Assembly (NCBI GenBank): GCA_048013815.1
Contig: CM106585.1
Span: 12,400,001 to 12,464,000, forward strand
Origin: Setoptus koraiensis
Taxonomy: Eukaryota > Animalia > Arthropoda
Length of the DNA stretch: 64,000 bases
Reading direction: 5' to 3'
Program-made: the position numbers and the translations under genes
Part shown: one piece after another, positions 8,975 through 31,076 of the stretch
Layout: every line of letters begins with the position of its first letter
Position numbering within the stretch: position 1 is the stretch's first letter
The notes under the pieces: model-generated
What the model saw: the letters and a program-made list of their open reading frames with translations, nothing else
Databases searched by the model: none
What the model was told of the DNA's origin: nothing

Positions 8975-11900
8975 ATGGCTAACATTGTTACCAGCGACTC
9001 TAAGGCGCCCGTACGCGACCCAAAACGCGTTCAATTTGGTATTTTAAATCCGGATGAAATTCGGCAAATGTCCGTCACTGAGGGAGGTATACAATATCCA
9101 GAAATCTATGAGAATGGTAGACCGAAATTGGGCGGCCTCATGGATCCGCGTCAAGGCGTTATTGATCGTGCTTCAAGATGCCAAACATGCGCTGGTAATT
9201 TATCCGAATGCAGTGGCCACTTTGGTCATCTAGATTTAGCCAAACCTGTCTATCACGTGGGCTTCATACCTAAAACAATCAAGGTCATGCGATGTGTGTG
9301 CTTTTATTGCTCAAAAATGCTAGTTTCACCATCGAATCCAAAAGTCAAAGAAGTTGTCAATGATACGAGGGGTAATCCCAGAAAACGTTTGACAATGATC
9401 TATGATCTATGCAAAAGTAAGACCATTTGTGAGGGCGGCGAAGATATAGATCAGTTAAAATCTCAGGTGGACCAATTCAACAGTGTAGATATCGGTAAAA
9501 CAGAGGAAGATGAGAAGAAGAAATTGGCTCATGGCGGTTGTGGCCGAGTTCAACCATCTATTAGACGAGCAGGTCTTGAATTGACCGCTCAATGGAAAAC
9601 AACAAATGAAGATACCCAGGAACGAAAGATTGATCTTACCGCTGAACGTGTCTGGGAGATCTTCAAGCATATTAGTGATGAAGAATGCGCTATTCTCGGT
9701 ATGGATCCCAGATACGCCCGTCCAGATTGGATGATATGCACTGTATTGCCCGTACCACCATTAGCGGTTCGACCAGCAGTTGTTATGTTTGGTTCGGCTA
9801 AGAATCAAGACGATTTAACACACAAGCTATCTGACATTGTTAAATGTAATAATGAGTTAAAGCGAAATGAGTTGTCAGGGGCAGCAGCGCACATCATTGC
9901 CGAAAACATTAAAATGTTACAATATCATGTTGCTACGTTGATAGATAACGAAATACCTGGAGTGCCGAAGGCCCAACAGAAGTCTGGTAGACCCCTGAAA
10001 TCTATTAAGCAGAGACTCAAGAGTAAAGAGGGTAGAATCCGTGGTAATCTCATGGGAAAGCGTGTGGATTTCTCTGCCCGTACAGTCATCACACCAGACC
10101 CAAATTTACGTATTGACGAAGTAGGAGTGCCCAAATCTATAGCACAAAATCTGACCTTTCCAGAAATTGTTACTCCATATAACTTGAACAAAATGCGTGA
10201 ATTGGTCATGAAAGGAAACAACCAGTACCCTGGCGCTAAGTATATCATCCGTGATAATGGTGAACGTATCGATTTACGTTTCCATCCTAAAAGTTCTGAT
10301 ATTCATGTACAAGTCGGATACAAAGTAGAACGACACATTTGCAGTGGAGATATCATAGTTTTTAATCGTCAACCAACTTTACACAAAATGTCCATGATGG
10401 GTCACAGAATACGCGTGCTCCCATGGTCCACATTTCGATTGAACCTCAGTTGTACATCACCTTACAATGCAGATTTTGATGGAGATGAAATGAATCTGCA
10501 TGTTCCGCAATCTTTGGAGACTCGGGCAGAAATAGAGCAGCTAGCTATGGTGCCCAGATTGATTGTCACCCCCCAAAACAACAAACCGGTCATGGGTATA
10601 GTGCAAGATACTCTATGTGCTGTCCGTAAGATGACCAAGCGCGATGTGTTCCTAACTTCTGAACAAATGATGAATTTACTTATGTTCCTGCCAATCTGGG
10701 ATGGGAAAATGCCGATGCCTGCCATTATCAAACCAAAACCTTTATGGACAGGAAAGCAGTTATTTTCCATGATAATTCCCGGCAACGTCAATCTCGTGCG
10801 TTACCACTCTACCCACGACGAAAAAGAAGATGATCTCTACAGGTGGTTAACAGTGGCAGACACTAAGGTTCTTATAGAGCACGGAGAACTGCTCAGTGGT
10901 ATAGTATGTTCCAAGACAGTTGGTGCCGCTAGTGGCTCATTGCTTCATGTTGTTTTTAACGAACTGGGTCATGAGATCGCTGGAGCATTTTATGGTCATA
11001 TTCAAACCGTTGTGAACAACTGGCTTCTTCTTGAGGGCCATACAATTGGTATAGGTGACACGATCGCAGATCCAGCTACTTATGAAGATATTCAGGACAC
11101 GATCAGAAAAGCGAAACAAAATGTCATAGAAGTCATTCAAAAAGCCCACAAGAAAGGTTTAGAGCCAACTCCTGGTAATACTTTGCGACAGACATTCGAA
11201 AATCAAGTGAACAGAATACTTAATGACGCGAGGGATAAGACTGGAGCATCGGCTCAGCGCTCGCTGTCTGAGTATAACAACTTCAAATCTATGGTCGTCG
11301 CTGGTTCTAAAGGTTCTAAGATCAATATATCTCAAGTTATTGCATGTGTGGGACAACAAAACGTTGAAGGTAAACGTATTCCCTTCGGTTTTAGAAAGCG
11401 CACATTACCTCATTTCATCAAAGATGATTATGGGCCGGAAAGTAGGGGTTTTGTGGAGAACTCTTATTTAGCTGGATTGAATCCATCTGAGTTTTTCTTC
11501 CACTCTATGGGAGGTCGCGAGGGATTGATTGATACCGCTGTCAAAACAGCCGAAACTGGATATATTCAGCGTCGTCTCATAAAGGCCATGGAGAGTGTAT
11601 CTGTAACTTATGATGGCACAGTTCGAAATTCTAATGGTCAAGTCATTCAACTGAGGTATGGAGAAGACGGTCTAGATGGTGCTAGCGTGGAATTTCAGAA
11701 TCTACCTACTTTGCGTCCGTCTAACGCAGCTTTCGAAGAATGTTACAAATTTGACACCAGCAATGATCGGCATCTAAAGAGAATCTTCCAGGACGAGGTA
11801 GTTCGAGAAATTCTTGGCCGAGGAACTATTGAGCTAGAAAGAGAGTGGGAAAGACTAAAGAAGGATAGAGAAACCATAAGATCCATATTTCCTACCGGTG

Positions 11901-14431
11901 ACCAGAATGTCGTTCTACCCTGTAATTTAAAGCGTCTTATAGAGAATTCTCAGAAGATTTTCCATGTCAACCCAAGAGCCCTAACTGATCTTAGCCCTCT
12001 GCGAGTCGTAGAGGGTGTTGAAGAATTAGTTAAAAAATTGATAATCGTGCCTGGTGAAGATAGGCTGAGTGTACAAGCCAACGAAAATGCAACTATTCTA
12101 TTCAAATCCCTTATTAGATCCACACTTTGTACAAAAAGAGTTGCCGAAGAGTTTAGGCTTACAACCGAAGCTTTCGAATGGTTACTCGGTGAAATCGAGG
12201 CTAGATTTCAACAAGCTCAAGTTCAGCCTGGAGAGATGGTTGGAGCTCTTGCAGCACAATCTCTGGGTGAGCCTGCTACTCAGATGACGCTCAATACTTT
12301 CCATTATGCTGGTGTGTCAGCCAAAAATGTCACACTTGGTGTGCCTCGTCTCAAAGAAATTATAAACATTTCCAAGAAGCCTAAGACTCCCTCTTTGACA
12401 GTATTCCTAACGGGCGCTGCGGCCAGAGATGCCGAAAAAGCCAAAGATGTACTATGCAGGCTAGAGCATACTACTCTAAGAAAGGTTACTGCCAATACAG
12501 CCATCTACTATGATCCAAATCCTCAGGAATCTGTAATTATGGAGGACCGAGAGTTCGTCAAGATTTACTACGAGATGCCTGACTTTGATACTTCGCGTAT
12601 CTCACCCTGGCTCCTTCGTATTGAACTCGACAGGAAACGTATGACTGATAAGAAACTTACCATGGAACAAATAGCTGATAAGATTAACCTCGGATTCGGC
12701 GAAGACTTGAATTGTATTTTTAATGACGACAATGCTGAAAAACTTGTCTTACGAATCAGAATAATGAACAGTGACGACAAAATGACAGAAGAAGAAGAAC
12801 AATCTGTAGATAGAATGGAAGATGACGTTTTCTTGCGCTGTATTGAGGCTAGCATGCTAAGTGACATCACGCTCCAAGGAATAGAATCAATCGCGAAAGT
12901 ATACATGCATCTACCAACTACAGAAAATAAGAAGCGCATAATAATAACAGACACCGGAGACTACAAAGCTCTTGCCGAATGGATTCTTGAAACAGACGGC
13001 ACTAGTCTTATGCGAGTTTTGTCGGAACAAGATGTGGACCCAATCAGAACATATTCCAATGATATTTGTGAGATTGTCAGTGTTCTCGGTATAGAAGCAG
13101 TGAGAAAGGCTGTCGAGAAGGAAATGAATCATGTCATTTCTTTCGACGGATCCTACGTAAATTACAGGCATCTTGCTTTACTCTGTGATGTTATGACAGC
13201 GAAAGGGCATCTTATGGCAATAACAAGGCACGGTATCAATAGACAGGATGTTGGTGCCCTAATGCGATGCTCTTTTGAGGAAACTGTTGATGTACTTATC
13301 GACGCGGCTGCTCATGCTGAATTAGACCCTCTTAAAGGAGTATCAGAGAATATTATTATGGGTCAGTTGTCGAGTATCGGCACAGGTTGTTTAGGAATGT
13401 TATTAGATCCTGAACAATGTAAGGAGGGTATAGAAATACCTCTCAACGATGACGGAACTGAAGACCTATTTGGTGATATTGCCTATGGTCCTTCCCCCGG
13501 AGGAATGACTCCATATTCTCAAGGTACACCTGCTTATAATCAAGGTGGTTGGTCACCAGACGGTGGCATGACTCCCAGTGCAGCAGGATTCTCGCCGTCG
13601 CCTTCAGAGCTGATGAGTCCTGCTTGGTCATCGCCTGGATCACCTGCTTCTCCAGGTGGACGTTCGCTCGCGGCAAGCCCTGCTTATGGAGGAGCCTCTC
13701 CAAACTACTCACCATCGTCTCCAGCCTACGGTGCAGATTATGGAACATCTCCTGGATATTCACCTACTTCACCAGCTCTATCGCCGGCTTCGCCAAGTTA
13801 TCAGCCAACTTCGCCTAACTACTCACCGACGTCACCATCATATTCTCCTACGTCACCTTCCTATAGCCCAACATCACCCAACTATTCGCCGACCTCGCCA
13901 CGATATTCACCCACATCTCCTAATTACTCTCCGACGTCCCCCAATTATTCCCCAACTTCACCCAACTATTCACCGACCTCGCCATCTTATTCACCGGCAT
14001 CACCCTCTTACAGTCCAACATCACCTAGTTATACACCAGCATCACCTTCTTATTCTCCTTCCTCACCATCATATGGACCGTCATCGCCGTCATATTCCCC
14101 TTCCTCACCATCCTACAGCCCAACATCACCGAATTACTCCCCTACTTCACCCCGGTACTCGCCCTCATCCCCCAACTACTCACCGACGTCACCTAACTAC
14201 TCTGCAACTTCACCAAATTATTCACCAACATCGCCGTCCTATTCTCCAGCTTCACCCTCCTACAGTCCTACATCACCTAGTTATTCACCGGCATCACCCT
14301 CTTATTCACCGTCGTCACCATCATACGGACCGTCATCGCCATCTTATTCTCCTTCATCGCCATCCTACAGTCCGACATCACCAAATTATTCGCCAACTTC
14401 GCCACGATACTCGCCCAATCAAAGAAAATAA
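8975..14431 (+). CDS. RPB1: RNA polymerase II largest subunit, intronless, 1818 aa
   Basis: [10 protein letters not shown] catalytic motif, Zn clamp CQTC...CSGHFGH, bridge helix [15 protein letters not shown], heptad CTD. Confidence 0.99.
13757..14428 (+). repeat. RPB1 CTD: 32 contiguous heptads (consensus YSPTSPS/N)
   Basis: 21-bp period in frame, from YSPTSPA (13757) to YSPNQRK. A few degenerate heptads lie upstream. Confidence 0.97.
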
Positions 14432-14999
14432 GTTGTAAATATAGCAAATTATATCTATTAAAAGGCATAAAGATCCCGGACCAACTTGAATCATTTTCAT
14501 GAAACTGTGGTTGCCCCTCTCTTTTCATCATTTATCTGCAGCGTCTGTTTCTGAGTTTAGAGCAGTTTTATTCATGTAAATATCTCTACTGACAACATTA
14601 TAGTAACGGCTTATGAAAGTGTATTTGTTTATGTCTAATGGAAAACTTTCAAGTTTTTTGATTGCCCGGGGTGACACTATGCAAACATACATCTTTTAAA
14701 CGATGATCATGCTTTGTAAAATGCCGCATCATCTAATCTCTTGCATCGTTTTTTTTTCGAGAATATGGTTTTTCTGCTTTTCGGACTGCACTCCTAGTAG
14801 ATGTACTTTTGAGTACTTCTCATGTCGTTTATTTTCATTTTGCCATTTCATCTCATTTCTACCGTTTCATTCACATAACTGTTAGTTGCATACAAGTTAT
14901 TAAGCTCTTTGAAATAAAATAATAATATAATGTGTATATCGGTGCGTAGGATTTGCTCGCTCACTCGTCGTTGGTGGTGCTGACAGATAGTTGATTGTG

Positions 15000-16113
15000 A
15001 CACTAATGTCGTCCATTCTGTGGCGCGTAATATATGATATTGCCTCTAAATTTATTCAATGGCTTATATTGTATTGCAAAGTAATGGTCAGTTGTTGTCG
15101 TTGTAGTTGTGCGACCAGCGTTTAGTATTGACGCGAAGCAAAGGACGTCCGTTGTGGTAAAACAATAATTTACCATTTTTGCTGAATGTGTGACAATGAT
15201 TAAAAGAACAAAAGCATCGCAAACATCTAGCGCAAGTACACATGTATTGAAGATACAGTAGTGGTGGTTGTAGTTGCCGTAGCAAAGTCAGTTGTGATAA
15301 TAGCGATGTTTAGTTAGTAGTCAAATGTAGGGGAAAGAAAAACATACAGCATTAGATGGGATGCAAATGATTGTAGTAATTGCTTAAGCTATCCGCAAGA
15401 CTACTCTTGTTGTTGATTGGATCAGGTCAAGTGCTCATGTGAACAAACGAAGATAAACGAAAACTAGTGAGTAAACTGGTCACATGTGTTGGGCGACGGT
15501 TTCTACAATTGTACAATTGAGAACACTAAGTTTATAGGATCAACTGTTTTGTTTTTCAACAATTGTGTGGTAAGTTGCTGATTGTTGGTCAGTGATACAT
15601 TATCAAGAGATAAGATAAACAAGTGGCTAGTTATTGTTGTTGAGCGACCTGATCGATATGCATACATGTTTGTGCCATATGTATATGTTGTGGTTTACTT
15701 AAGCGAGCCATGTGGGCACCAGTAACAACAACAGCGGCTATTACCAAGTTATCATAGAGATAAGAGAGCCTAATAGAGCAACAACAAGTAATTTTGATTA
15801 TTTTCTCGTTCTCGTTAATGTTGTATTCATCTAGATCTTAGCAATAGTATTAAGTTTGATGGAATTCTCAATGCAGGCTCACAAGTGGAAAGAAGAATGT
15901 GAGAGAATGCAAGAGTTAATGCAAACAGAATGCTGAGTGTGTGAATGCGAGTGATAAGACTATTGATTGTCTGTCTGAACTTAATAAAGGTTGAATATTG
16001 CATCATAAAGAAGCTAGGTAGAGGATAGGTTTAAAACAATGAAAAGACAAATGAGTTTAAGTTTCGAAATGGGGAAAAGGAAAGAAGGACGAGCCGCGAA
16101 CAGGAGATACAGG

Positions 16114-16150
<37 letters not shown>

Positions 16151-19100: not shown

Positions 19101-19840
19101 ACGACAGCCACAACAGAGACGACAACAACAGCCACAACAGAGACGACAACAACAGCAACAACAGGCCGCACTAACGAGCCTGGCAGAGGGAGTGGTGGTG
19201 GCCCTAAGACTGGATAGATGGATGGGCATAGCACAATGAAAGTAGTTACATAGAAATAATAACAAGTATCTCTGGCTTGCACCACCACATCCTGCTGGCT
19301 GCCAAGTGTTTGCCAAACGCTTGTCCCCCTCCCCTCTCGCCAGCAACAACAACAGTAACAACGGCGACAACAACAACAGCAGCAGCAGCGGCGGCAGCAA
19401 CAACAGCGACGACGACAACAACAGCAACAACAGAGACGACGACAGCAGCAGCAGCCGCTTCGAACGAAGAAGCACCATTCGCAAAAACGACTCGCAATGC
19501 GCAATCTCGCACCGCACTTGAGCATGCAGTGAGCGAGACAGTTCGACAACTAGAGAGAGAGAGAGAGAGAGAGAAACAGACACACAGACAGAGATAGAGA
19601 GAATCCATGAGACAGAGCGCCCCATTCGAACATTTCGCAAACGAGCGAGCGATCCAACCGCAAGCACCAACTTAAACCCACGAGAGCCGACCAAACCACT
19701 TGAACTTTCGCGCCAGAAGCGGTTGCATCACAATTGGCGCGAACTCGTACACACACACACACACATACACACATAGAGTGAGAAAGCGAGAGAGAGAGAG
19801 GGAGAGAGAGAGCAAGAGAAAGAGAGCGAGAGAGAGAGAG
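15000..19840. repeat. Microsatellite-rich non-coding domain ((GA)n, (CAA)n, (ACA/ACG)n, (CA)n, (ATT)n)
   Basis: Many simple-repeat tracts (e.g. 16118-16147 GA, 19030-19160 ACA/ACG, 19790-19845 GA). The ORFs here are low-complexity translations only. Confidence 0.8.
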
Positions 19841-19844
19841 AGAG

Positions 19845-20131
19845 AAGCGTCAATTAACGCGCGCCAGTTAATGGTTAACAAAAACAACACACAATAACCC
19901 AATCACCGACAACAACACCAGAAATAATTGATTATTTGTCATTTTCAATCCAACTCACCAACTCACCAACTCACCTGACAGCACGTGCGCCGCCGGGACC
20001 GAAGCACGCACACACGCACACAAACACCGAGAGAGCGCAGCGCAGCACAGAAGAGCACAGCAACACTGACACGCACACCATAGGGCGTAATAATCAATTG
20101 TTTAATTGTTGCTGCTACCTGTGTGTGTGTA
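19845..20131 (+). promoter_or_regulatory. Conserved upstream non-coding region of DM gene copy 1
   Basis: A 50-bp block (19845-19894) matches 26557-26606 at 49/50. Further shared blocks run up to the ATG. Confidence 0.7.
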
Positions 20132-21679
20132 ATGTCATCGTCGCAGTCGCCCCATCGCAGCGCCAACGCAGCCACCACCAACAATAGTGGCCAGACCAAT
20201 AATAGCAGCATCAATAGCAGCAGCAACAACAACAACAACAGCAGCAGCAACAGCAGCAACAACAACAACAACAATGATGCAAATAATAGCAACAACAACA
20301 ACAAGCCCAAACGGAACCCGTTTTGTTCGCGGTGCCGCAATCATGGCAAAAGTGCCCAAGTGAAGGGCCACAAGCGACATTGTGAATATAGAGAATGCCA
20401 GTGCGAGGGCTGCAAACTTGTTGAATGTAGACAAATTGTATCGGCGGCGCAAATAAAGCGACGCCGCTACCAAAAACAAGACGAGGAATGTGGTAGACAG
20501 ATTGAGATAACACCGCCAAAATTCACACGTGAACCACCAGCAAATGATCCAGCAGCAATAATAGCATCAACATTGTATCACTCAAATCATCATCATCATC
20601 ACAATCACCACAACCATCATCAGCATCATCATCACCAGTCGGCACTCACCACGGCCACCACAATACAATTACCCACCCACGCTAGTGTTAATTTGGCCAC
20701 TTTGGTGCAGCAAGCGGCCAGCGCGAGCCAGCACCAATCGGCTGCAAGTGCAATGGCTTTGCAGCAGCATCAGCAGCAGCAGCTCACAACACCGCCGACC
20801 GCAACCACGCCAGCAAGCCTGAGAAATTGCTCTTTGCCCTCGGCGTCGTCGTCGCCCTCGTCGTCATCGTTGCACCTGTCCGCTGGCGCGGCAGTGGCGG
20901 CCGCCGCCGCAGCCGCAGCAGCACGTGCAGGTCACCATCATCACCAGCATCAGCACCACCAGCAGCAGCACCACCATCAGTCCATGGTGCACCATCAGTT
21001 GCACCTCCACCAACAACACCAGCAGCACCAACACCAGCAGCAGCAGCACCAACACCAACAGCAGCTTCAGCAGCAGCACCAACAACAGGCACAGTCTGAT
21101 CAGCTGACGGCGTCCTCGTCCGATCACAGTTCGCCGGCCGGCTCGCCCTGTGATCGCGTAGCCAGTGTCGATCGGGTCATCAATCCGGCTTTAGTGTTGC
21201 CGTTACACTTAAAAACAAGCGATTCCGCTGCCGGAAGTGGAGCGGCCTCGGCCGGCACGCCGACGCCCGTATCGGGCGGCGGTGGCGGCGGCGGCCAATC
21301 GGGTGTGCTGTTGCAGGCTCACAGCAACCAGCAGCAACAGCAATTGACATCATCTCAGTCTCTACTCAATCTCAATCTCACCACACAACAGCAGCAACAA
21401 CAGCAGCAGCACCAACATATTAATTTGAACCAATTGCAACAAATACAGCAATTGCAACTACAGCTACAACAGCACCACATTCAACGTCAGCACCATCACT
21501 CTCACCACCAGCATCACACAAGCGGCCAGCCGGCGAGCGCTGCGGCCGCCGTTGCCGCCGTTGCCTCGGCCAGCCAAATAACTGACCAGCTACCTGTGGA
21601 TTTGTCGGCGCTTGCTGCCCACTTGCAGGCGTCTGGCGCCAATTTGGCCGGCTGGCCGTTCAATCTGTACTCCATGTAG
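20132..21679 (+). CDS. dsx: Doublesex-like DM-domain transcription factor, copy 1 (single ORF, poly-Q/H/A C-terminal half)
   Basis: DM Zn motif CSRCRNHG...KGHKRHC...CQCEGC followed by RQ...AQ...RR..QKQDE, where QDE is typical of the dsx subfamily. ATG at 20132. Subfamily assignment is inferred. Confidence 0.8.
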   Translation: MSSSQSPHRSANAATTNNSGQTNNSSINSSSNNNNNSSSNSSNNNNNNDANNSNNNNKPKRNPFCSRCRNHGKSAQVKGHKRHCEYRECQCEGCKLVECRQIVSAAQIKRRRYQKQDEECGRQIEITPPKFTREPPANDPAAIIASTLYHSNHHHHHNHHNHHQHHHHQSALTTATTIQLPTHASVNLATLVQQAASASQHQSAASAMALQQHQQQQLTTPPTATTPASLRNCSLPSASSSPSSSSLHLSAGAAVAAAAAAAAARAGHHHHQHQHHQQQHHHQSMVHHQLHLHQQHQQHQHQQQQHQHQQQLQQQHQQQAQSDQLTASSSDHSSPAGSPCDRVASVDRVINPALVLPLHLKTSDSAAGSGAASAGTPTPVSGGGGGGGQSGVLLQAHSNQQQQQLTSSQSLLNLNLTTQQQQQQQQHQHINLNQLQQIQQLQLQLQQHHIQRQHHHSHHQHHTSGQPASAAAAVAAVASASQITDQLPVDLSALAAHLQASGANLAGWPFNLYSM

Positions 21680-22202
21680 CGTGTGCTAATAATAATAATA
21701 ATTGAGTTGGTGGCTGGCGGTTGCGCAACGAGCCTGGCAGCCGGAGCAGCAACGGCAGCGCCACAGCCACAGCAGACGGACGGCCGGCCGGCCGGACTAG
21801 CGGCCATTTTGGACATTTCGGCGGCTGGCATTCGGACGGGCGGGGAGTGGTCAGTGTGAGAGGCCACAAACAGGCCATAGCAGCGCAACGGCACAACAAC
21901 CAAACAACAACGGCAACGCAACAACCAAGCAACAACGGCAACACAACAACAACAACAGCAACACAACAACCAAACAGCAACAACGCGAGAGCAACACACT
22001 AACACAAGAGCAACAAAGAGTTAAATGGGAGTTGCGACAACAAGAACAATTTATGGCCAGTTTGCTTTCGTATTTTATCATCATCATCATCTCATTTTCT
22101 CGACTCACACACACACACACACACTCACACTGACAATGACTGAGTTTGTTGCGACTCGGCTATTAGCATCACACAGTTGCAATTTTAGTAGTATGGTTTT
22201 AG

Positions 22203-22238
<36 letters not shown>

Positions 22239-23844
22239 CGACGATGACGACGGCCTCTCACGTCTGTGCGCCAGTGCCGGCCGAGCTGGCCAACTGGTCA
22301 AATTGCTCAGACATCGCACACGCACTGACACGGACGAACCGACTGCTCGTCGGCCGGCTGACAGACGTAAAATAAATATTATGTTATTATATAACTCACT
22401 GTACCAACCGAGTGTGTACACACAGGCGAGGGGGACACAGCAACGGCAACAACATGTTGTTAGCGAGCCGAGTTCATGTAAGAAGCTGTTCATGTTCATG
22501 TAAGAATAACCATGATGAATAATAAACATTGACTCTCTCTTTTTTCTAAATTATTATTACCATTTTCATTATGACTCGCTGGCACACAACACGACCGCGC
22601 TGCCGGACCGCGGCCGGACCGCGGCCGCCACTCGCGGCTGCAGCTCGGGCGCTGCCGGACCGCGCCCGAGCCGCAGCAACCGGCCAAGCCGCGAACGGGC
22701 CGACGGGCGGAACTGTTGGCGCGCGCGGCGCGCCTATAATGCGCCGCAGCGACCACTGAGTCAGTGAGTGGCACTGACTGACAGATATGCAAAATGTGGT
22801 TCGCTCGCATGTGCGCTCGCTGTGTGTTTGTTCGACTGTGTGAGCGTTTGTTCGACGGTGTGTGCGCTTGTTCGACGCTCATATAGGTGGCCATGCACAA
22901 GTGCGCACACAATGAGCGAACAATGGCCAGCGCACACAGTGTTGCGTGTATGATTTATGTGCAGGCGCCTGTAGTGGCGAGGACGAGCCAGCGCGCACTG
23001 ACACGGCATATTTTTCGCCGCCGCTCACAATATAGGCCAGCTATGTGCGCGCCTATATCGATCAGCTGGCCACGGCGCGCTGGGCAGCCGGACCGGCGTG
23101 CGTGCCGCACGCCCGCGTGTGCACGTGTGCAACCAGTGCCCGTGAGAACGGCCTGCACAAACCCCCCGTCCAATTGACTCCAAACTTGCCGGCCCGGCAA
23201 GTTTGTTGTCGGGCGGCTGCGGCGGCTCGCAAGCGTCCGACCGTCGGCAGAGTTGCCCGCAGTTGCCCGCCGACGCAGACGGTCTGCGGCAGACCGGGCG
23301 CGCCGCGCAGCGGCCGGGCGAGCGTTCGCATCGGGCGCGCGCAACGACCCAAACGACCGGCCGGCCGGCCGGCCAGATGAGCCGCTAGTTAGTTACATTT
23401 AGTTAATAAGTACACACAATGATGTCTACTGTTATTGCGAATCGCTTATTACATATTACCAGCGCCGCCGATAATACACATTACATGGTTTCTCCCTCTA
23501 ACAAGCGAGGGGGATAATGGCGGCCATTAAAGTTGACGGCAGATTTGCCTCTTGGCCGGCTCTCGCTCCCCCTCGCTCCATGCATCGCTCACTGGCTGTC
23601 GCTCTCCGCGCTCCCCTCGATTCCAAAAAGATTCCGCGCGGGCCAAAGAGAGCGCGCGCCGCCGATGGAAGCGTCGCGAAATGTGAGCGCACAAAAAAAC
23701 TTGAGTATCTCGAATTAGCATTCAATTTCAGCGCACAGGGCATAACTTTTTGAAATCTCGCTCTGTCGTTATCAATCGTGAATGAATGACAACTCGTTTC
23801 ATTTAGTCTGTGTGCCGCTGCAGCCAATTGTGCTAAATGGGGTT

Positions 23845-23922
23845 GGCGGCCGACGGGGCGGCCGACGGGCGGCCAGTGGGGCGGCCAGTGGGGCGGCCGG
23901 TGGGGCGGCCGGTGGGGCGGCC
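23845..23922. repeat. ~12-bp GC-rich tandem repeat (7x GGCGGCC, six forming GGGCGG GC boxes)
   Basis: GGCGGCC at 23845, 23857, 23868, 23880, 23892, 23904 and 23916. Confidence 0.85.
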
Positions 23923-24063
23923 AACGGTGGCGAGCAATGGTGGCGACAGTTGTCGCCACTTTCGCACAGACGCACACGCAGTTTTTGCGCAACTTGCCGC
24001 GCGACATTGCACAGTTTGGTGACGTAACAAGGTTGTGTGTGTTGCGCCGCATTTCATTGCCAA

Positions 24064-24120
24064 TATCACCATCGCTGTTGTGTGATAGTATCACCATCGC
24101 TGTTGTGTGATAGTATCACA
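24064..24120. repeat. 25-bp direct repeat x2 plus partial (TATCACCATCGCTGTTGTGTGATAG)
   Basis: Exact copies at 24064-24088 and 24089-24113. Each has internally inverted TATCAC/GTGATA. Confidence 0.9.
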
Positions 24121-25409
24121 CTGTCACTGAGAACCGCTGTCGCTGTGCTAACGAGACGAGATGAGATTATTACTGGCAATGGTACACATAATGTATGTTG
24201 TGTAACATGGGCATAGTCAAGCAGTCAAGTATTTAGTGTACATGTCAGCTCGGCCAGTGAATTGAATTGCACGAATGCACCATCACCCAGTGACAGCATC
24301 GCGCTGTCAATGGGGGCAATATCACTTGCATGGCTTCGCTCGGTTTGCCGCTGTTGCTGTCGTTGTTTCCATTTTGTAGTAGCAAGATTTTTATTTATTA
24401 ATTTGCCACCATCTTGGCTGGAATTATCGTGTGTGTGTGTCGTACTATGCGACTCATAGTCGCTATGACATGGTGTGTCATAGTGTGAGAGCGAGAGCTT
24501 TATTTGTTGTCGCACAATAACAAACAAAGCATAATGGCACGTAACGCTGAAACGCGAGCGCCCGCTCGCCAAGCGACAGGGCTGGCTCCCCTTTCTGGCT
24601 GGCTGTCGCTAATTTGCATATCACAAGTTTGAGCGCTGTGAGCGTCGCAGTGCGTGCCTGCACCAACACCGTGCACGTGTCTGAGCGGCCAGTTTGTGGG
24701 GCCTGCCGATTGGATTGCGCACTCTGCACTCTGCAAGATGACTGCTGGCGCTGGCCGGCCGGCCGGCCGCAGTGTGGACTGCACAGTGCGGACTGGTCGG
24801 TGCGGACCCCTCGGCGCGGACTGGTCGGCGCAAAGCTGCGCACCAAGGCGCACCAAGGCGCACGAAAGCGCAAGTAAGCCGCGGACGGGAGCTGCGGCGA
24901 CGGATTGAAAAAGAAGTGCTGCCCGTCGGAGACATCGGCAAAAAGGCAGACGTTGTTGTATGTGTGTGCATCGTTAGTGGATATTGCTAATTTAGTTGAT
25001 TACATGTATATTTGAGCACATGTTTAACAGCGCAGCGGGTGTGCCAGCGCAGTCAGCAAGTACTTTTGTGACTCTGTTTCGATCGGTTATTTTCGAGTGC
25101 TCGCAGCCAAGCAATGGCATGCACAAGGTATGCGTCTGGCTGGTCGTTGTGTCGTTGTTGCGTCGCTGTTGTGCGTCGCTGTTGTGTCGCTGTTGTGTCG
25201 TTGTTGTGTGTGTCGTTGTTGTGTGTGTCGCTGTTGTGTGTGTCGTTGTTGCAGTTGCAACATTGGCGTAGCTCGACGGAGCGCATGTATTTGTATATTT
25301 ATACAAATACTACAAATAAATATAAATAAAATCAAACACGCACACCATATAATGGTATCTAGTGTGGCATCGCAGCGCATTACGCTCGCACTGGATAGTT
25401 GTTCAGTGG

Positions 25410-25474
25410 CAGACTCTGCTGAACAGACTGCTGCTGAACAGACTCTGCCGAACAGACTCTGCTGAATAGACTCT
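25410..25474. repeat. 14-15 bp tandem repeat (CAGACTCTGCTGAA) x4.5
   Basis: Units start at 25410, 25424, 25439, 25453 and 25467. Confidence 0.85.
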
Positions 25475-26120
25475 ATTCAGGGACGCTCGTCGGCAAGCTT
25501 GCGACGAATTTCGCAACAGCGTCGCAGGTTCAAGCTGCAGCCCGACAGCCAATACGGCGACAGCCAATACAGCGGCAGCGACAGCAATACAGCAACGATA
25601 TCCAATAAGCGGCAGACAGTAAAAAACGCACACACACACGCACACGCACACATGCACCTAGGCACACAAAACAAGGAAGTGTGCCTAGCTAGCCGCAGCG
25701 AGCGAGCCCAAGTGAGTGATCAGCACATGGTGCCTTATAGCCATGCTATGACGGCTACGAGGCTGCAAGGCTGTGTGCTATGCGCTACGAGTGGTAGCTA
25801 TGAGCCGAGGTAGCTATGAGCTGTTGCAGCAGTGGCGGCAGTGGCTGCTGATCTTGCCTGTGTCCTAAAGGGTGTCTCAATCAAGCGACGAAGTTTGCAC
25901 GGCGAACGCTGGCGCGCTCGCTGCAGCTTGTGAGCGGCGCATTTCGGCGCTCAGCTGATTCGCTATGGTAATGTGTGTGCAGAGTGCGGTGCTTGTGGAC
26001 CTTCGTGTCGCTCGCTGATTGAGACACCCTTTATAAAATGTGTCTGCGAGGAAAAGGCGACAAATCGGCACTAACCGTATGTATCTTGTTTTGTCGTCGA
26101 ACTCACCAGAGCCAGCGCTA

Positions 26121-26159
<39 letters not shown>

Positions 26160-26556
26160 CCATCTATTTATATACATCATACATCACATAGTATTAATAA
26201 TTGTATACAACAACATCGTCGGCATCATCGTCATTATTACGGCCGCTACCACACACCATTTCTGCCTAATAAAATAAAACAGTTAGATATTGCCCATATC
26301 TGATTGTTTTATTTTGTTAGGTGGAAACAACAGCAGCAACTACTAATTTGCTAATTAACACGACAATATTACGACCACAAAAATTAAATTAGATTATTAA
26401 ATTAATTAACTAGCTAGCTTATATAATATAAGATATTTAGTGAGAGAGACAGTGAGACAGAGACAAAGAGCGAGACACACACACACAGATTGAGATTCAG
26501 ATTGAGAGTTAGATAATTGCAGACACACAACAGTGAGACAGAGAAACAGCGACCAC

Positions 26557-26822
26557 AAGCGTCAATTAACGCGAGCCAGTTAATGGTTAACAAAAACAAC
26601 ACACAACCCAAATACCAACAACAACAACCAACCAACCAGAAATAACTGATTGTTTTGTTGTTGTTTCATTTTAAATTCAACTCACACCTGACTGTACGTG
26701 CGCCGCCGGGACATAAGCACGCGCGCACACACACACACACACACGCAGCACAGCAACACTGACACGCACACCATAGGGCGTAATAATCAATTTTTTAATT
26801 GTTGCTGCCACTTGTGTGTGTA
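26557..26822 (+). promoter_or_regulatory. Conserved upstream non-coding region of DM gene copy 2
   Basis: Paralogous to 19845-20131, with conserved blocks separated by divergent microsatellite spacers. Confidence 0.7.
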
Positions 26823-26914
26823 ATGTCATCATCGCAGTCGCCCCATCGCAGCGCTAACGCAGCCACCAACATCAGTAGTGGCCAGACCGATAATAGCAGC
26901 AGCAACAACAGCAG

Positions 26915-26946
<32 letters not shown>

Positions 26947-27950
26947 ATGCAAACAATGCCAACAACAACAACAAGCCCAAACGGAATCCGTTTTGTTCGC
27001 GCTGCCGCAATCATGGCAAAAGTGCCCAAGTTAAAGGCCATAAACGACATTGCGAATATAGGGAATGCCAATGTGAGGGCTGTAAACTTGTTGAATGTAG
27101 ACAAATTGTTTCGGCGGCGCAAATAAAACGCAGACGCTATCAAAAACAAGACGAAGAATGTGGCAGGCAGATTGAGATATCGCCACCAAAGTTCACTAGG
27201 GATCACAATGATTCAGCAACATTGTTTGCCAACAGACTTATGAGCACCGCTAAACAACATCTACAAATGGCCTCTTCGGTTATGGGGGGTCCCATGTCTG
27301 CTGCTGCCGCTGCTGCTTTTTCCGCAAACCAAACAATCCCGCCGACAATGTCATCGTTAGCACCATCAATGTTAAATCATCAAAGCGCTTTGCAACATCA
27401 GCATCACCATCATAGGCAACATCTCCATCAACAGCAACACCCGCAACAACAAATACATCACCATCAGCAACAACAGCAACACAGTAGTAATATTGGCAAT
27501 CACGCCGATACTATTAATAGTAGTAGTAATCATCATCATCACCAACAACATCAACAACACCAGTTACTTATTGCGAGCACTCTAAGTGCCAGAACTACTT
27601 CTCAGCAACAACAACAGCCACCCCCGCCGCCGCCGCCACCACCAACACAACAACAGCATCAGCCACTTAGGTCACCATCTATTGCCGAACAGATCGAGCT
27701 AGTGGAAGATCTACAGCCGTTCGGTTCGTTGGCCATCTTTGCCTGGCTTAAAAGTGAAAATTTCGATCTTATTAAGTTGCGCAAAATGATTGATTCCTCT
27801 AGGTCATCATTCAACGATTTATTGAAATATAAACAAATGTCCCTAGCGACAATAAACGCTCTGCCTGTAACACAGACCCTAATTTGGCCTGATATAAATG
27901 CTGCTCATCATCATTTGAGGCAGACAACTCATCACCATAACATATTATGA
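26823..27950 (+). CDS. dsx: Doublesex-like DM-domain transcription factor, copy 2, with putative dsx dimerisation (OD2)-like C-terminal domain
   Basis: DM domain identical in protein to copy 1. C-terminal amphipathic segment SIAEQIELVEDLQPFGSLAIFAWLKSENFDLIKLRKMIDSS resembles the dsx OD2 pattern (by-eye similarity). ATG at 26823. Confidence 0.8.
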
Positions 27951-27959
27951 ATATGACCT

Positions 27960-30900
27960 CTATGAATTAACAACATAATTTTGTACATGTTTATCAGCTT
28001 GCGCGTAAGACGTTGCAAAGTTGAATTTTGGACGTATAGTTGTGATCGTGTCTTTAAACAAATATTCAATTGACACAGGAAATTGATTGTCACTCATGGC
28101 CATACAATATGGATGTAATGTATAAATGTAACGCTTACACCAGAAGTAGCGTTGAAAAAATAATAAATAATAATCCAATTTCCTTTTATCTTGTCCCGAA
28201 CTCAAGTACTGTCCACAACTCTCCAAAAGATCACAAATTAACTTGATTCTGAAAAGATTATCCGGTGGATCAATTTCAGACAACTGTATGTGCACTAAAG
28301 TGCTTCCGGGTTGAGGATAGTAAATTCCATACGTGATTAGTGAATAGAGAATCTTGAATATCAATGATGACTCTGACAACTTGTAATTGTATAACTCTCC
28401 TAAAAATCGTATCATGGGTATGCGACGTTGATTGAAGTTAGCTTGATTGATTTCCATCATGAGCAATATGTCCTCAACAACACCGTCTATAACCAGAGTT
28501 GAGACCCAATTATTATATCTATTGAATGCGGCCAATAAAGCAGCAACATACCTGATATTGTAAAATTTTACATTGTACACTTCTATCAAGCACTTGATGG
28601 TGAACTTGGCTATCTCAGGGTCTTGCCAATCCAACTTTCTTAGTTGTGTCAAGACTTTGTCTATGGTAGACCTGCTAAGACAATCATACAAGAGATACTT
28701 GATATAGGCTTGCGTTGGAGGAATTTCGACAGTTTGAGCTACCACTTCTGGAGGTTTTGAAAAGTAATAGGCATTCTCAATCATGGTAATATACTTCGAA
28801 TCAACTGAAAGTAATAACTTCTTTCTCATCATCTGTTCAAGCAACAATTTTATCTTGTAGTGAGATTCTTGCGATCTATATAGTAACCTTCCACACGTCT
28901 CTAGTAGATTGCAACACATCTCTATGTGGTGGTGAGTGAAGTCGGACAATAGTATTTTGAGACAAGTTAATGCCTCTTGTTTGGAGAATAAACCGAACTT
29001 GACAAGCTCACCTATGAATCTAACATTTTTTACTTTGCTCTCAATGTTAATTTGATCCTTTTTTCGAAAAAGCATCCTAAAGTCTTGTTTGAGCATAACG
29101 ACTAACTCCGGAGCCATACTAGGAACAACAGGATGAATGGTGGCAATCAGCCTAGCGTAGAATGGTAGCAGATCAAGACGGGTTCTCTGCACTGAGAATA
29201 AGGTCTTAACAAGTTTCTTCCTCCCAAATTTAGTATTGAAGTATCTCACGAAATCCACCGCTGCTTTATCAATCATGTCTCTATTAACGCAGTTAGCTAG
29301 TTTAGAAAAGTATGAATCTGATGTCATCCGGCCTTTCTGATCAGAGGAGGAAATGAGATATTGGGCTAGAGCCGCGTTAGCTGTTTCATCGCCCTCTGTT
29401 GAGTTTTCCATGGTGTCACCGGATGTAGTAATGTGCGACTTCATGTGTATGTCATTTGTTTCATCGTCAGCATAATCCATGAGAGACTGATCCTCCTCTC
29501 CAAAGCGATCTAAAGTCTCCAAATCGATTGGAGAACGGTCGCCTTGCTCTGATTTGGTCTCTTCATCCTCGTTTGTGTCACTTGCAATTTCTTCGTTTGT
29601 ATCATTGGAACTCTTGCTAAATATCTTTTGAATATCGTTTGGACTCAACGATTGTTTTTGCTCTTCAGTAGTATCCATGTTGACTTCCATTTGACCATTA
29701 ATTTCAGGCGAATTCGAATCAGTGGCCATCTGCACGTTCTGAGATTCCTTTTGACTTTTTTCATCCTTGGAACTTAGTGTTTCTTTCAGATTTGAACTAG
29801 AAATCTTATTCACCAAGTGCGGAAAGATCGATTTCAGATCTAGTAAGTTTTCGTAGAAATTTCTAGCATCATCATCCTCCCATATGGATAAAAGATTTGG
29901 ATCTGAACCAGAGTGAAACAACTCAGTCGATGTAGAATCTTCTTCGTTGGCGTTCTCCTTAGAAGAATCTAGCACAGGTAAATTAGGCAAGCTCTCATCC
30001 AATATATCGCTCAATTGTTGAACTATGTTGTACGATTTTTGACATTCTATTTGCTTTGCTTCAAACCTTTCCTTTCTTTCCCGGGACAGCTCACCTTTTG
30101 TATTGATGACTCTCTTGTTCTGTAGGTCCAATTGATTTAATTCCTCATGCAGATTAATTGTGTGATTGCAGAATATATTATAATAATCCTTCAGGCATGA
30201 TCTCAGAGCACGTTGTTTCTCTACTGGAAGAAAATCACTTTGTGGAATGTTGCAACCATGTTTTTCAGCCAATAAACGCATCTTACTAGAAACCAATCCA
30301 GCGTAATCATCACCACAGGATCGACAGAAAGACAATATTGCACTGGCGTTTTGATAACTGTTTTTGTCATGAATAGTTAAGTAGGTAAGCAAATTACTTA
30401 AAACATTCAAGCTATCCTTAGGACTAAAAATACCACTCGATATCAATTCAGCAAATAGCCTAAGATCAACACGCATCTTCGAAGGGTTGAATATTGTATC
30501 GCTTGGCTGGTTGCACAATATTCCTGTAGAGGCCAACGATGCTTGGTTAGTGGAGCTATGGTTTGTAGAGGAGCTGTTGTTGGTAGGGGATGTTGAAGTA
30601 GACATATACAACATGCAACCTGATGTAGATTGCAATGGAATGTTTGACGTATTGTTAGAATCGTACGTAGTTTGCTTCTTGATTGAAGGGAAATATTTGA
30701 TCCATTGACTAAGCAGTTGCTTACTGAATTGAGGATAACGTTGATGCAATCGCGAACAAATATCAATGACGGTATGTACATCGCTGAGTTTCAATTTGGC
30801 TTCCACAATCGAAGAAGCAATCTCGGATATAAACTTAGTAAGGTTCAAGCTATTGATATCCTTGATGAGCTGATCCCTTTGATTCTCCGTCATGTTTTTA

Positions 30901-31076
30901 ATTTTCCTGACGAAAGTTGAATTCTTCTTGATTGAAGAGTCGAGTGTAGCGAAGAAACTCTCGTCTGGATAGGTGATATTTTCTTTCGCATTTTGTTCGC
31001 GTTGCTTCAACTTCAGAGAAAGCCTTTCTTCAGTTTCTCTTATAAATAGATGGATGGTCTCTACTTCTTGTTCCAT
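27960..31076 (-). CDS. UPF2: Regulator of nonsense transcripts 2, intronless ORF with three MIF4G domains, ending immediately after MIF4G-3
   Basis: LDSSIKKNSTFVRKIK, LNLTKFISE, KMRVDLRLFAEL, IWEDDDARNFYENL, RTRLDLLPFYARL, HHHIEMCCNLLETCGR, FLGELYNY, FRIKLICDLLESCG. Confidence 0.93.
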   Translation of the reverse strand: MEQEVETIHLFIRETEERLSLKLKQREQNAKENITYPDESFFATLDSSIKKNSTFVRKIKNMTENQRDQLIKDINSLNLTKFISEIASSIVEAKLKLSDVHTVIDICSRLHQRYPQFSKQLLSQWIKYFPSIKKQTTYDSNNTSNIPLQSTSGCMLYMSTSTSPTNNSSSTNHSSTNQASLASTGILCNQPSDTIFNPSKMRVDLRLFAELISSGIFSPKDSLNVLSNLLTYLTIHDKNSYQNASAILSFCRSCGDDYAGLVSSKMRLLAEKHGCNIPQSDFLPVEKQRALRSCLKDYYNIFCNHTINLHEELNQLDLQNKRVINTKGELSRERKERFEAKQIECQKSYNIVQQLSDILDESLPNLPVLDSSKENANEEDSTSTELFHSGSDPNLLSIWEDDDARNFYENLLDLKSIFPHLVNKISSSNLKETLSSKDEKSQKESQNVQMATDSNSPEINGQMEVNMDTTEEQKQSLSPNDIQKIFSKSSNDTNEEIASDTNEDEETKSEQGDRSPIDLETLDRFGEEDQSLMDYADDETNDIHMKSHITTSGDTMENSTEGDETANAALAQYLISSSDQKGRMTSDSYFSKLANCVNRDMIDKAAVDFVRYFNTKFGRKKLVKTLFSVQRTRLDLLPFYARLIATIHPVVPSMAPELVVMLKQDFRMLFRKKDQINIESKVKNVRFIGELVKFGLFSKQEALTCLKILLSDFTHHHIEMCCNLLETCGRLLYRSQESHYKIKLLLEQMMRKKLLLSVDSKYITMIENAYYFSKPPEVVAQTVEIPPTQAYIKYLLYDCLSRSTIDKVLTQLRKLDWQDPEIAKFTIKCLIEVYNVKFYNIRYVAALLAAFNRYNNWVSTLVIDGVVEDILLMMEINQANFNQRRIPMIRFLGELYNYKLSESSLIFKILYSLITYGIYYPQPGSTLVHIQLSEIDPPDNLFRIKLICDLLESCGQYLSSGQDKRKLDYYLLFFQRYFWCKRYIYTLHPYCMAMSDNQFPVSIEYLFKDTITTIRPKFNFATSYAQADKHVQNYVVNS

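What the first reader, a model, noticed from the sequence alone, without database searches (positions are those of the whole stretch)
19845..27950. Tandem pair of intronless doublesex-like genes: identical DM domain, unrelated C-termini
Two DM-domain ORFs 6.7 kb apart encode the same protein from KPKRNP to RQIEI, yet differ at many third codon positions across that stretch. This points to purifying selection on both copies and argues against an assembly duplicate. After PPKFTR the proteins are unrelated: copy 1 has a long poly-Q/H/A tail and copy 2 an OD2-like domain. Insect dsx makes sex-specific C-termini on a common DM domain by alternative splicing. Here two separate genes may supply the two isoform types. 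The sex-determination role is inference.
Basis: partly seen in the sequence, partly recalled or inferred. Interest (0 to 1): 0.75.

Follow-up and report, generated by a model that had tools for sequence, protein, structure and literature searches.

The report
Ancient tandem DM-gene pair in mite
Two neighbouring intronless genes for sex-regulator-type (DM/Dmrt) DNA-binding proteins are real, but they are an old gene pair shared by gall/rust-type (eriophyoid) mites rather than a new duplicate. In this genome their front halves have been copied onto each other and one copy has lost its conserved tail domain.

Summary
Two intact ORFs (CDS 20132-21679 and 26823-27950, + strand) each carry a Pfam DM domain. 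They differ at 1 of 76 residues from KPKRNP to PPKFTR but at 24 third codon positions. The shared stretch also takes in the N-terminus and about 310 nt upstream.

The genome looks like an eriophyoid mite's, so intronless genes are normal there. The pair is not a recent duplicate. The same order, Rpb1 > type A > type B < UPF2, or parts of it, recurs on metagenome contigs of at least four other lineages. Type A ends in SPLDLTSPIVD; type B has a long tail.

In those lineages A and B differ at 12-13 DM residues. Here both copies share derived characters, so the 5' ~700 bp were homogenised by gene conversion and then kept under strong purifying selection.

Copy 2 keeps the family's C-terminal helical domain. 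Copy 1 has lost it and ends in 382 open codons of Q/H/A/S-rich sequence.

Homology of that domain to the Dsx dimerisation domain is only weakly suggested, and dsx orthology stays unresolved.

A 16-nt sense-strand element precedes every family gene examined and is unique to these two genes in this genome.

The sex-determination role remains inference. The scan had not noted this pair on other DNA.

The parts
8975..14431 (+). RNA polymerase II largest subunit (Rpb1), intronless 1818-aa ORF; conserved upstream neighbour of the type A gene
   Evidence: ORF. tblastx to the Rpb1 genes of L008, L019 and L020 at 72-91% identity. Pfam Rpb1 domains are recorded on the L008 gene.
19821..20526 (+). Copy 1 side of the homogenised tract (upstream leader, N-terminus and DM domain)
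   Evidence: blastn gives 19821-20526 against 26532-27196. Identity by segment: upstream 85.5% with about 98% blocks at 19846-19896 and 20054-20117, N-terminus 91%, DM 88%.
19863..19878 (+). Conserved 16-nt leader element GCCAGTTAATGGTTAA, copy 1
   Evidence: There are only two exact hits to GCCRGTYAATGGTTWA in the 48.7-Mb genome. The element is present upstream of every family gene in the other loci.
20132..21679 (+). Copy 1 CDS (515 aa): positional orthologue of type A. It has a DM domain, the linker motif and a 382-codon Q/H/A/S-rich tail, with the C-terminal family domain lost.
   Evidence: No hit of the C-domain HMM in copy 1 or in any frame of 14000-27000, even at E<=100. The tail stays open with P about 8e-6. 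Only the linker motif aligns to the type A tail profile.
20312..20452 (+). DM DNA-binding domain of copy 1
   Evidence: Pfam PF00751, residues 64-110 of the listed ORF; own-genome scan.
26532..27196 (+). Copy 2 side of the homogenised tract
26575..26590 (+). Conserved 16-nt leader element, copy 2
26823..27950 (+). Copy 2 CDS (375 aa): orthologue of type B. It has the DM domain, a degenerate linker motif, a Q/H/P-rich spacer, the C-terminal helical domain and a short WP-containing tail.
   Evidence: Synteny with convergent UPF2, as in L010/L022 and L036.
26982..27122 (+). DM DNA-binding domain of copy 2
27669..27845 (+).
   Evidence: Family HMM hits residues 283-341, E 1e-24. AlphaFold2 model has pLDDT 89.9 with two long helices. 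No Pfam hit. hhalign to Dsx dimer domains gives P 0.04-0.29.
27960..31076 (-). UPF2-like MIF4G protein, convergent with copy 2; conserved downstream neighbour of type B
   Evidence: Pfam MIF4G, E 6e-80. The same arrangement is seen in L010 and L036.

Best explanation
These are the two members of an eriophyoid-mite-specific family of intronless DM-domain transcription factors. The family has sat as a tandem pair (Rpb1 > type A > type B < UPF2) since before the sampled lineages split.

Family members normally have five parts: a conserved 16-nt leader element, a DM domain with an unusual recognition helix (…VSAAQIKRRR…), a linker motif (DPAALIAKTL), a low-complexity spacer, and a ~50-residue C-terminal helical domain. 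After that domain, type A ends at once (…SPLDLTSPIVD) and type B continues into a long tail.

Two things happened in this genome. First, about 700 bp (leader, N-terminus, DM domain) were homogenised between the copies by gene conversion, probably with type A as donor. Both DM domains were then held almost unchanged while synonymous sites diverged. Second, copy 1 (type A) lost the C-terminal domain and now ends in a long Q/H/A/S-rich tail that is still kept open.

Inferred consequence: both proteins should recognise the same DNA sites, and may compete or pair there, but carry different effector or partner-binding tails. This gives an isoform-like pair encoded by two genes. A role in sexual differentiation is inferred only from what DM/Dmrt genes do elsewhere.
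For: Taxon. The best named relative is from Aceria tosichella. The genome is 48.7 Mb in 2 contigs with long intronless genes. Eriophyoids have tiny genomes, about 84% intronless genes, and are haplodiploid (PMC7738191).

Old tandem pair. A and B lie on the same strand in L017/L019 (about 7.6 kb apart), L036 (4.1 kb) and L009. Rpb1 lies upstream of A in L019 and L020. UPF2 is convergent with B in L010/L022 and L036.

Conversion. The two G000 copies differ at 1 of 76 residues, against 12-13 between A and B in sp2 and sp6. They share the derived PPKFTR where all others have PPV/ILxx. They also share their N-terminus and a leader of about 255 nt between the element and the ATG. In sp2, A and B are alike at nucleotide level only in the DM and C-domain. 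The G000 copies pair in the tree with 94/94 support, while sp2_B and sp6_B pair with each other. Forcing all A copies together costs 12.9 lnL, AU p 0.068. Both G000 DM domains are nearer to type A (6-8 differences) than to type B (11-13).

Selection. dN/dS is about 0.02 over 76 codons at pS 0.52.

Domain loss. The C-domain HMM hits copy 2 at E 1e-24 and nothing in copy 1 or in any frame of 14-27 kb. The tail ORF stays open with P about 8e-6.

Leader element..
Against: There are no expression data of any kind, so activity of either gene, sex bias and the position of the transcription start are all unknown.

The AU test against A-monophyly is only borderline (p 0.068). DM and C-domain trees do not cleanly separate A from B across the family.

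The upstream blocks are better conserved (about 98%) than synonymous sites (68% of third positions identical). That fits either constraint or a second, younger conversion tract, and the two cannot be told apart here.

The donor direction rests on distances that are confounded by faster evolution of type B.

In one lineage (L008) type A is convergent with Rpb1, so the cluster is not invariant. Species identities of the metagenome contigs are unknown.
Confidence: 0.72

Rival explanations
1. A recent, lineage-specific tandem duplication of one DM gene, after which the 3' halves diverged beyond recognition.
For: The front halves, including non-coding leader, are alike. The two copies pair in the DM tree.
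Against: The same two-gene layout, with distinct A and B tails and the same flanking genes, occurs in at least four other lineages whose A and B DM domains differ at 12-13 residues. No third family member or relic of a lost type A gene is found in the genome or between Rpb1 and copy 2. The tails already differ at the first residues after a sharp tract boundary. A loss of A followed by re-duplication of B's front half into A's place cannot be distinguished from conversion.
Confidence: 0.1
2. Copy 1 is a decaying gene. Its DM domain looks intact only because conversion from copy 2 keeps refreshing it, and its tail is drifting low-complexity sequence.
For: The family's C-terminal domain is lost. 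The tail is 60% Q/H/A/S with tandem-repeat arrays. The region is GC-rich (55-57%), unlike its surroundings.
Against: Twenty-four synonymous differences have built up since the last homogenisation, with at most one amino-acid change. So both copies were under purifying selection for a long time without further conversion. A 382-codon open frame is unexpected by composition, P about 8e-6, while the other five frames are closed. The linker motif in copy 1 is closer to the family consensus than that in copy 2.
Confidence: 0.1
3. There was no gene conversion. The two DM domains are identical simply because the domain is extremely constrained.
For: The DM domain is highly conserved across the family, with 40 invariant alignment columns.
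Against: A and B differ at 12-13 of 76 residues in other lineages. The similarity here extends through the unconstrained N-terminus and about 310 nt of leader, which are unrelated between A and B in sp2. Both copies share the derived PPKF.
Confidence: 0.04
4. An assembly artefact, i.e. a collapsed or duplicated haplotype.
For: None beyond the repeat itself.
Against: Identity is 88% in the DM, with many indels upstream and entirely different 3' halves and flanks. The same layout appears in independent assemblies of other species.
Confidence: 0.01

Closest known systems
Insect doublesex (DsxF/DsxM isoforms)
   Same: Both have an N-terminal DM domain and a C-terminal helical domain, and the proteins differ only after that domain: short end versus long tail in eriophyoid type A versus B, as in DsxF versus DsxM. 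The chelicerate-type Dsx dimer motif (…LYAILK..KFN…) lines up with the family's …IYAWLR.E.F[ND]… in the same register.
   Different: The two forms come from two intronless genes, not from alternative splicing. Pfam DSX_dimer does not hit and hhalign gives P 0.04-0.29. The DM tree does not place the family with Dsx. prospero is not linked. The recognition helix is unusual (SAAQIKRRR where others have MA.QVALRR). Sex-specific use is untested.
Non-insect arthropod dsx paralogues (Daphnia magna dsx; Metaseiulus occidentalis XP_003740429/30; three copies in Neoseiulus cucumeris)
   Same: These are duplicated dsx-type DM genes in arthropods that do not use sex-specific splicing. There they are regulated by male-biased transcription (PMC6721801; PMC6902594).
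   Different: Those genes carry a recognisable Dsx dimer domain or fall in the dsx clade. Orthology of the eriophyoid pair to them was not established. The A/B tail dichotomy, the leader element and the partial conversion are not reported for them in the papers read.
Dsx forms without OD2 (termite single-exon dsx; Pediculus PhDsx1)
   Same: Like copy 1, these are DM-domain proteins of the dsx type that lack the dimerisation domain (PMC8346542 abstract; PMC6721801).
   Different: Those are the species' only dsx gene or a splice isoform. Here the domain-less form is a separate gene beside a domain-bearing paralogue with the same DNA-binding domain.
Concerted evolution in duplicated sex-determination genes (fem/csd in bees and ants; Privman et al. 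2013, seen only as a reference in PMC6902594)
   Same: A tandem paralogue pair in a sex-determination-type gene family, with part of the genes homogenised by conversion.
   Different: A different gene family (tra-like SR proteins). I did not read that paper. The parallel is from general knowledge.

Membership tests
DM-domain (Dmrt) transcription factors, Pfam PF00751 | Zinc-binding DM domain with the C-x2-C-x2-H-x8-H-x3/4-C-x4-C-x-C-x2-C pattern | tested here: met
   Both copies match 1-47/47 of the model, E 7e-16 and 2e-16. The family profile hits DMRT1 (4yj0) and Dsx (1lpv) DM chains in the PDB.
doublesex subfamily | C-terminal Dsx dimerisation domain (OD2, Pfam PF08828) | tested here: inconclusive
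   No Pfam hit in the window copies or in any of 22 family members at E<=1. No PDB sequence hit to the Dsx C-terminal domain. Foldseek found nothing and VIA gave at best Z 4.2 to unrelated helices. hhalign gives P 0.29 against insect Dsx dimer domains and P 0.039 against the horseshoe-crab, springtail and unnamed set, always in the same register. Copy 1 lacks the domain altogether.
doublesex subfamily | DM domain groups with Dsx rather than with Dmrt11E/93B/99B/DMRT1 in a phylogeny | tested here: inconclusive
   The eriophyoid family is monophyletic on a long stem. Its nearest rows are divergent multi-DM (MAB-3-like) domains, most likely by long-branch attraction, and Dsx rows are neither sister nor excluded. 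The best non-family profile hits are fish DMRT1, tick and horseshoe-crab proteins, all near 100 bits. Chelicerate dsx references were too few.
doublesex subfamily | Linkage to prospero (reported for insects, PMC6721801) | tested here: not met
   The Homeo-prospero domain is at C2:4.53 Mb and the pair is at C1:12.42 Mb. The criterion is known only for insects, so it carries little weight.
doublesex subfamily | Sex-specific isoforms or sex-biased transcription | not testable with these tools
   No transcript data are available.
Dmrt93B/99B (DMRT-A) subfamily | DMA domain (Pfam PF03474) | tested here: not met
   No DMA hit in any family member.
Eriophyoid type A / type B DM family (defined here) | DM domain with the SAAQIKRRR-type helix, the DPAALIAKTL linker, and the 16-nt leader element | tested here: met
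   Both copies.
Eriophyoid type A / type B DM family (defined here) | C-terminal helical domain (…LVEEIHQ.FGPLAIYAWL…), then either the A end (SPLDLTSPIVD) or the B tail (…LLWP.LK…) | tested here: met
   Copy 2: domain present at E 1e-24 plus a short B-type tail with …LIWPDIN…. Copy 1: NOT met, with no domain in any frame. It is assigned to type A by position only.

The most novel reading that the evidence does not exclude
Eriophyoid mites are intron-poor and haplodiploid. They may have hard-wired the two Dsx-type outputs into two neighbouring genes: type A with a short, DsxF-like end and type B with a long, DsxM-like tail. Both would be switched through one ultra-conserved 16-nt leader element, so that sex or ploidy is read out by choice of gene rather than by splicing. 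In this species the pair has been pushed further, to one shared DNA-binding front end with two unrelated tails.
Probability: 0.12. Interest if true: 0.85.

Novelty: new variant of a known kind. Interest (0 to 1): 0.55.

Why it matters
How sex is read out in haplodiploid mites is unknown, and DM/Dmrt genes are the one class of regulator used for sexual differentiation across animals.

This locus offers several concrete handles in a lineage of crop pests that has almost no introns:
- a conserved two-gene module with isoform-like C-termini;
- a 16-nt element unique to these genes in the genome;
- a natural experiment, in this genome, of identical DNA-binding domains joined to different tails.

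Sex- and stage-resolved RNA-seq plus mapping of the transcription start would quickly show whether gene choice replaces splicing here.

It is also a clean example of segmental gene conversion with a sharp boundary at a domain border, followed by long-term purifying selection on both copies.

Tried and rejected
- Pfam on the tails and on all 22 family members found only DM.
- The ESM Atlas search on the C-terminal part gave no usable hit.
- Foldseek against the PDB found nothing. VIA-align wide gave only generic helical hairpins, Z <= 4.2.
- A region-restricted word search with the DM domain returned only the eriophyoid family, so it gave no named outgroups.
- The big HMMER search found no protein outside the family with both DM and the C-domain. 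The '2-stretch' hits are double-DM proteins of spiders, ticks and other mites.
- DM-domain and C-domain trees are too short to resolve subfamily placement or the A/B split.
- My eye-alignments of copy 1 motifs (…ALVLPLHL… to the family ALHLFHFP motif; …QLPVDLS… to SPLDLTS) got no statistical support; only the linker motif aligns.
- The upstream blocks of this genome are not found in other species by blastn, apart from GA repeats and the 16-nt element.
- No Dsx-type 13-mer site lies in the shared leaders.
- Rfam found nothing in 14-32 kb.
- The 163-aa ORF between Rpb1 and copy 1 has no Pfam family.


Full report
**1. What is in the sequence**

The window holds two + strand ORFs at 20123-21679 and 26799-27950. 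The ORF tool uses bacterial starts. The first ATGs give CDS 20132-21679 (515 aa, copy 1) and 26823-27950 (375 aa, copy 2). Each has one full-length Pfam DM domain.

From KPKRNP to PPKFTR (76 codons) the proteins differ at one residue (T/S). The DNA differs at 27 positions, 24 of them third positions. This gives pS 0.52, dS about 0.88 and dN about 0.017.

blastn aligns 19821-20526 with 26532-27196. That covers about 310 nt upstream of the ATG (85.5% identity, with two blocks near 98%), the N-terminus (91%) and the DM region (88%), with a sharp right-hand boundary just after PPKFTR.

Past that boundary both proteins still show the family linker motif and then have nothing detectable in common.

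Copy 1's last 382 codons are 60% Q/H/A/S yet stay open. Composition alone gives P about 8e-6 for that, 0 of 20000 shuffles stayed open, and the other five frames carry 7-29 stops.

**2. Whose genome**

The genome has 48.7 Mb in two contigs. Neighbouring genes such as Rpb1 (1818 aa) and a UPF2-like protein (1038 aa) are single ORFs. The closest named relative of the DM proteins is from the wheat curl mite Aceria tosichella.

Eriophyoid mites have genomes of about 32 Mb with about 84% intronless genes, and they are haplodiploid (PMC7738191). Other agents' notes on this genome also call it a plant mite. So 'intronless' is the local norm and not a peculiarity of these genes. That paper does not mention doublesex or DM genes.

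**3. The family and its two types**

The word search and the all-against-all HMMER search found about 29 clusters of close relatives (E < 1e-30). Nearly all come from metagenomes or public read sets. Aligned, they share four features:
- a DM domain with an unusual recognition helix (…VSAAQIKRRRYQKQDEE…);
- the linker …PPVL.R.P..DPAALIAKTL…;
- a low-complexity spacer with an …ALHLFHFP… motif;
- a ~50-residue domain, …EQ..LVEEIHQ.FGPLAIYAWLRAE.FD..K.R.LIE.SR….

After that domain the proteins fall into two kinds. Type A stops after …NGHSPLDLTSPIVD. Type B runs on into a long tail with …SSPLYT…, …LLWPGLKL… and …HPHHLLPHFMQHH….

Copy 2 is type B with a shortened tail (…TLIWPDIN…HHHL…). The own genome has no further member. 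Its other DM loci are:
- a 345-aa gene at C1:10.99 Mb;
- fragments at L005 and L006. L006 belongs to the double-DM gene described by another agent.

**4. The pair is old**

In the window the order is Rpb1(+) 8975-14431, copy 1(+), copy 2(+), UPF2(-) 27960-31076. The same layout, or parts of it, appears elsewhere:
- Two long metagenome contigs of one other species (L017 at 95.7 kb, L019 at 130 kb) carry Rpb1(+), a type A gene (L019 9524-11026) and a type B gene (18630-20192) on one strand. The same B gene is followed by convergent UPF2 on L010/L022.
- L036 has type A (1329-2750, missed by the gene caller), type B (6854-8875) and convergent UPF2.
- L009 has the 3' end of a type A gene (351-566) and a type B gene (9658-11439) on one strand.
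- L020 has Rpb1 followed by type A.
- In L008, type A is instead convergent with Rpb1.

So copy 1 sits where type A sits and copy 2 where type B sits. The duplication predates the split of these lineages, whose synonymous sites are saturated against each other (pS 0.7-1.0).

**5. Concerted evolution of the front halves in this genome**

In the other lineages A and B differ at 12-13 of the 76 DM-region residues. At nucleotide level they are alike only in the DM and the C-domain in sp2. In sp6 they also share a 64-nt stretch around the start codon and two short low-complexity matches.

Here the two copies differ at one residue. Both have PPKFTR where every other family member has PPV/IL.. (one has PPKL). 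They share their N-terminus, and they share a leader of about 255 nt between the conserved element and the ATG that other species lack.

In a 10-sequence tree the two copies pair with 94/94 support and sp2_B pairs with sp6_B (84/84). Forcing all type A genes together costs 12.9 log-likelihood units, AU p 0.068.

Both G000 domains are closer to type A (6-8 differences; nearest is sp7_A) than to type B (11-13). This suggests A was the donor, although type B evolves faster in general.

Since homogenisation about half of the synonymous sites have changed and at most one residue has, so both DM domains have been under strong purifying selection. Copy 1 now has higher GC3 (0.60 against 0.42 over the CDS) and lies in a 52-57% GC stretch.

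The upstream blocks are better kept than synonymous sites. That means either constraint on shared regulatory sequence or a younger, shorter conversion tract. I cannot tell which.

**6. Loss of the C-terminal domain in copy 1**

An HMM of the family domain (22 sequences) hits copy 2 at residues 283-341 with E 1e-24. It hits nothing in copy 1 or in any of the six frames of 14000-27000, with all filters off and E up to 100.

Against a profile of type A tails, copy 1 scores above all 200 shuffles, but only through the linker motif. Copy 1 is therefore a DM domain plus linker plus a long low-complexity tail.

**7. Is it doublesex, and is the C-domain OD2?**

- Pfam DSX_dimer and DMA hit none of the 22 members, and the PDB sequence search finds only DM chains.
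- The AlphaFold2 model of copy 2's domain is confident (pLDDT 89.9) and shows two long helices. Foldseek finds nothing and VIA-align gives only generic helical matches, Z <= 4.2.
- With real Dsx dimer domains fetched by search and cut out locally, hhalign gives P 0.29 against insects. Against the divergent non-insect set (horseshoe crab P0060, springtail P0148, unnamed P0061) it gives P 0.039. All comparisons use the same register: …IYAWLR.E.F[ND]… over …LYAILK..KFN…. This is suggestive but is not proof.
- In a 206-row DM tree the family is one long-stemmed clade. Its nearest rows are divergent MAB-3-like double-DM domains, a likely long-branch artefact, and Dsx rows are neither sister nor excluded.
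- prospero, which is linked to dsx in insects (PMC6721801), lies on the other contig.

Dsx orthology therefore stays open. By elimination the pair is the most plausible dsx-type representative, since the genome's other DM loci look like other Dmrt types. That is inference, not a test result.

**8. A conserved leader element**

Aligning the regions before the start codons revealed a sharply bounded element, G(T/C)GCC(A/G)GT(T/C)AATGGTT(A/T)A. It lies on the sense strand before every family gene examined: nine genes of types A and B from six or seven lineages, with flanks not conserved.

In the whole 48.7-Mb genome the pattern occurs exactly twice, at window 19863-19878 and 26575-26590. One-mismatch hits (16) match the reversed-pattern control (12).

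In most species it lies 11-85 nt before the ATG; in sp2_A, as in both copies here, it lies about 250 nt before the coding ORF. It contains an ATG. That ATG starts a short upstream ORF here (MVNKNNTQ*), and is in frame with the main ORF in two relatives (P0001, P0007).

Its first half resembles the arthropod initiator TCAGTY (from memory, not tested). It may be a core promoter, a factor-binding site or a translational control element. It shows that A and B have kept a common control sequence since their origin.

**9. How it most likely works**

Shown: there are two intact genes, they form an old tandem pair, their front halves were homogenised in this genome, both DM domains are under strong constraint, the C-domain is lost in copy 1, and both carry the shared leader element.

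Inferred: both proteins bind the same DNA sites through identical DM domains and may compete or pair there. The C-domain of copy 2 mediates dimerisation or cofactor binding, as OD2 does in Dsx. Copy 1 acts through its Q/H-rich tail or as a competitor. The pair takes part in sexual differentiation as Dmrt genes do elsewhere.

In mites and crustaceans studied so far, dsx is controlled by male-biased transcription and not by splicing (PMC6721801). Domain-less Dsx forms exist in termites and lice (PMC8346542; PMC6721801). These make two-gene, transcription-level control plausible here.

**10. Verdict**

This is a new variant of a known kind, of moderate interest.

Noticed in passing
window 19863-19878 and 26575-26590; also L019 9254-9268 and 18673-18687, L036 1306-1320 and 6831-6845, L008 1690-1704, L009 9617-9631, L037 3393-3407: A 16-nt sense-strand element, GCC(A/G)GT(T/C)AATGGTT(A/T)A, lies upstream of every type A and type B gene. 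It occurs exactly twice in the 48.7-Mb genome and its flanks are not conserved. It contains an ATG. Its function is unknown; it may be a promoter, a factor-binding site or a 5'UTR element.
   Followed up: partly
window 20105-20112 and 26798-26805: The 8-mer ATTGTTGC lies 27 nt (copy 1) and 25 nt (copy 2) before the ATG, inside a 64-nt block that is about 98% identical between the copies. There are 7 occurrences in the 64-kb window. From memory it resembles the core of vertebrate DMRT1 / MAB-3 binding sites, so it could be an autoregulatory site.
   Followed up: no
window 21680-26530: The spacer between the two genes is 52-57% GC, against about 38-42% elsewhere in the window. It is full of short tandem arrays (periods 11-45) and long stop-free stretches on both strands. 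It has no Rfam hit and no similarity to the spacers of other species.
   Followed up: partly
window 27950 / 27960: The stop of copy 2 and the stop of the convergent UPF2-like gene are 9 bp apart. The B-UPF2 convergence is conserved in L010 and L036, with larger gaps there.
   Followed up: partly
L005 (G000:C2:22.79 Mb) and L006 (G000:C1:14.88 Mb): Two copies of a short DM-like fragment (…GHARDCPFKKCMCLRCRLLDARR) sit in short open frames. L006 lies where another agent describes a five-exon double-DM gene. L005 was not examined further.
   Followed up: no
L036 1329-2750 (+): The public gene call on this Logan contig misses the 473-aa type A gene. It calls a 277-aa ORF on the opposite strand instead.
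   Followed up: yes
P0036-P0039, P0043: Spiders, a tick and the acariform mites Brevipalpus and Halotydeus have proteins with two or three DM domains. These rank just below the eriophyoid family in the profile search only because the domains add up.
   Followed up: partly
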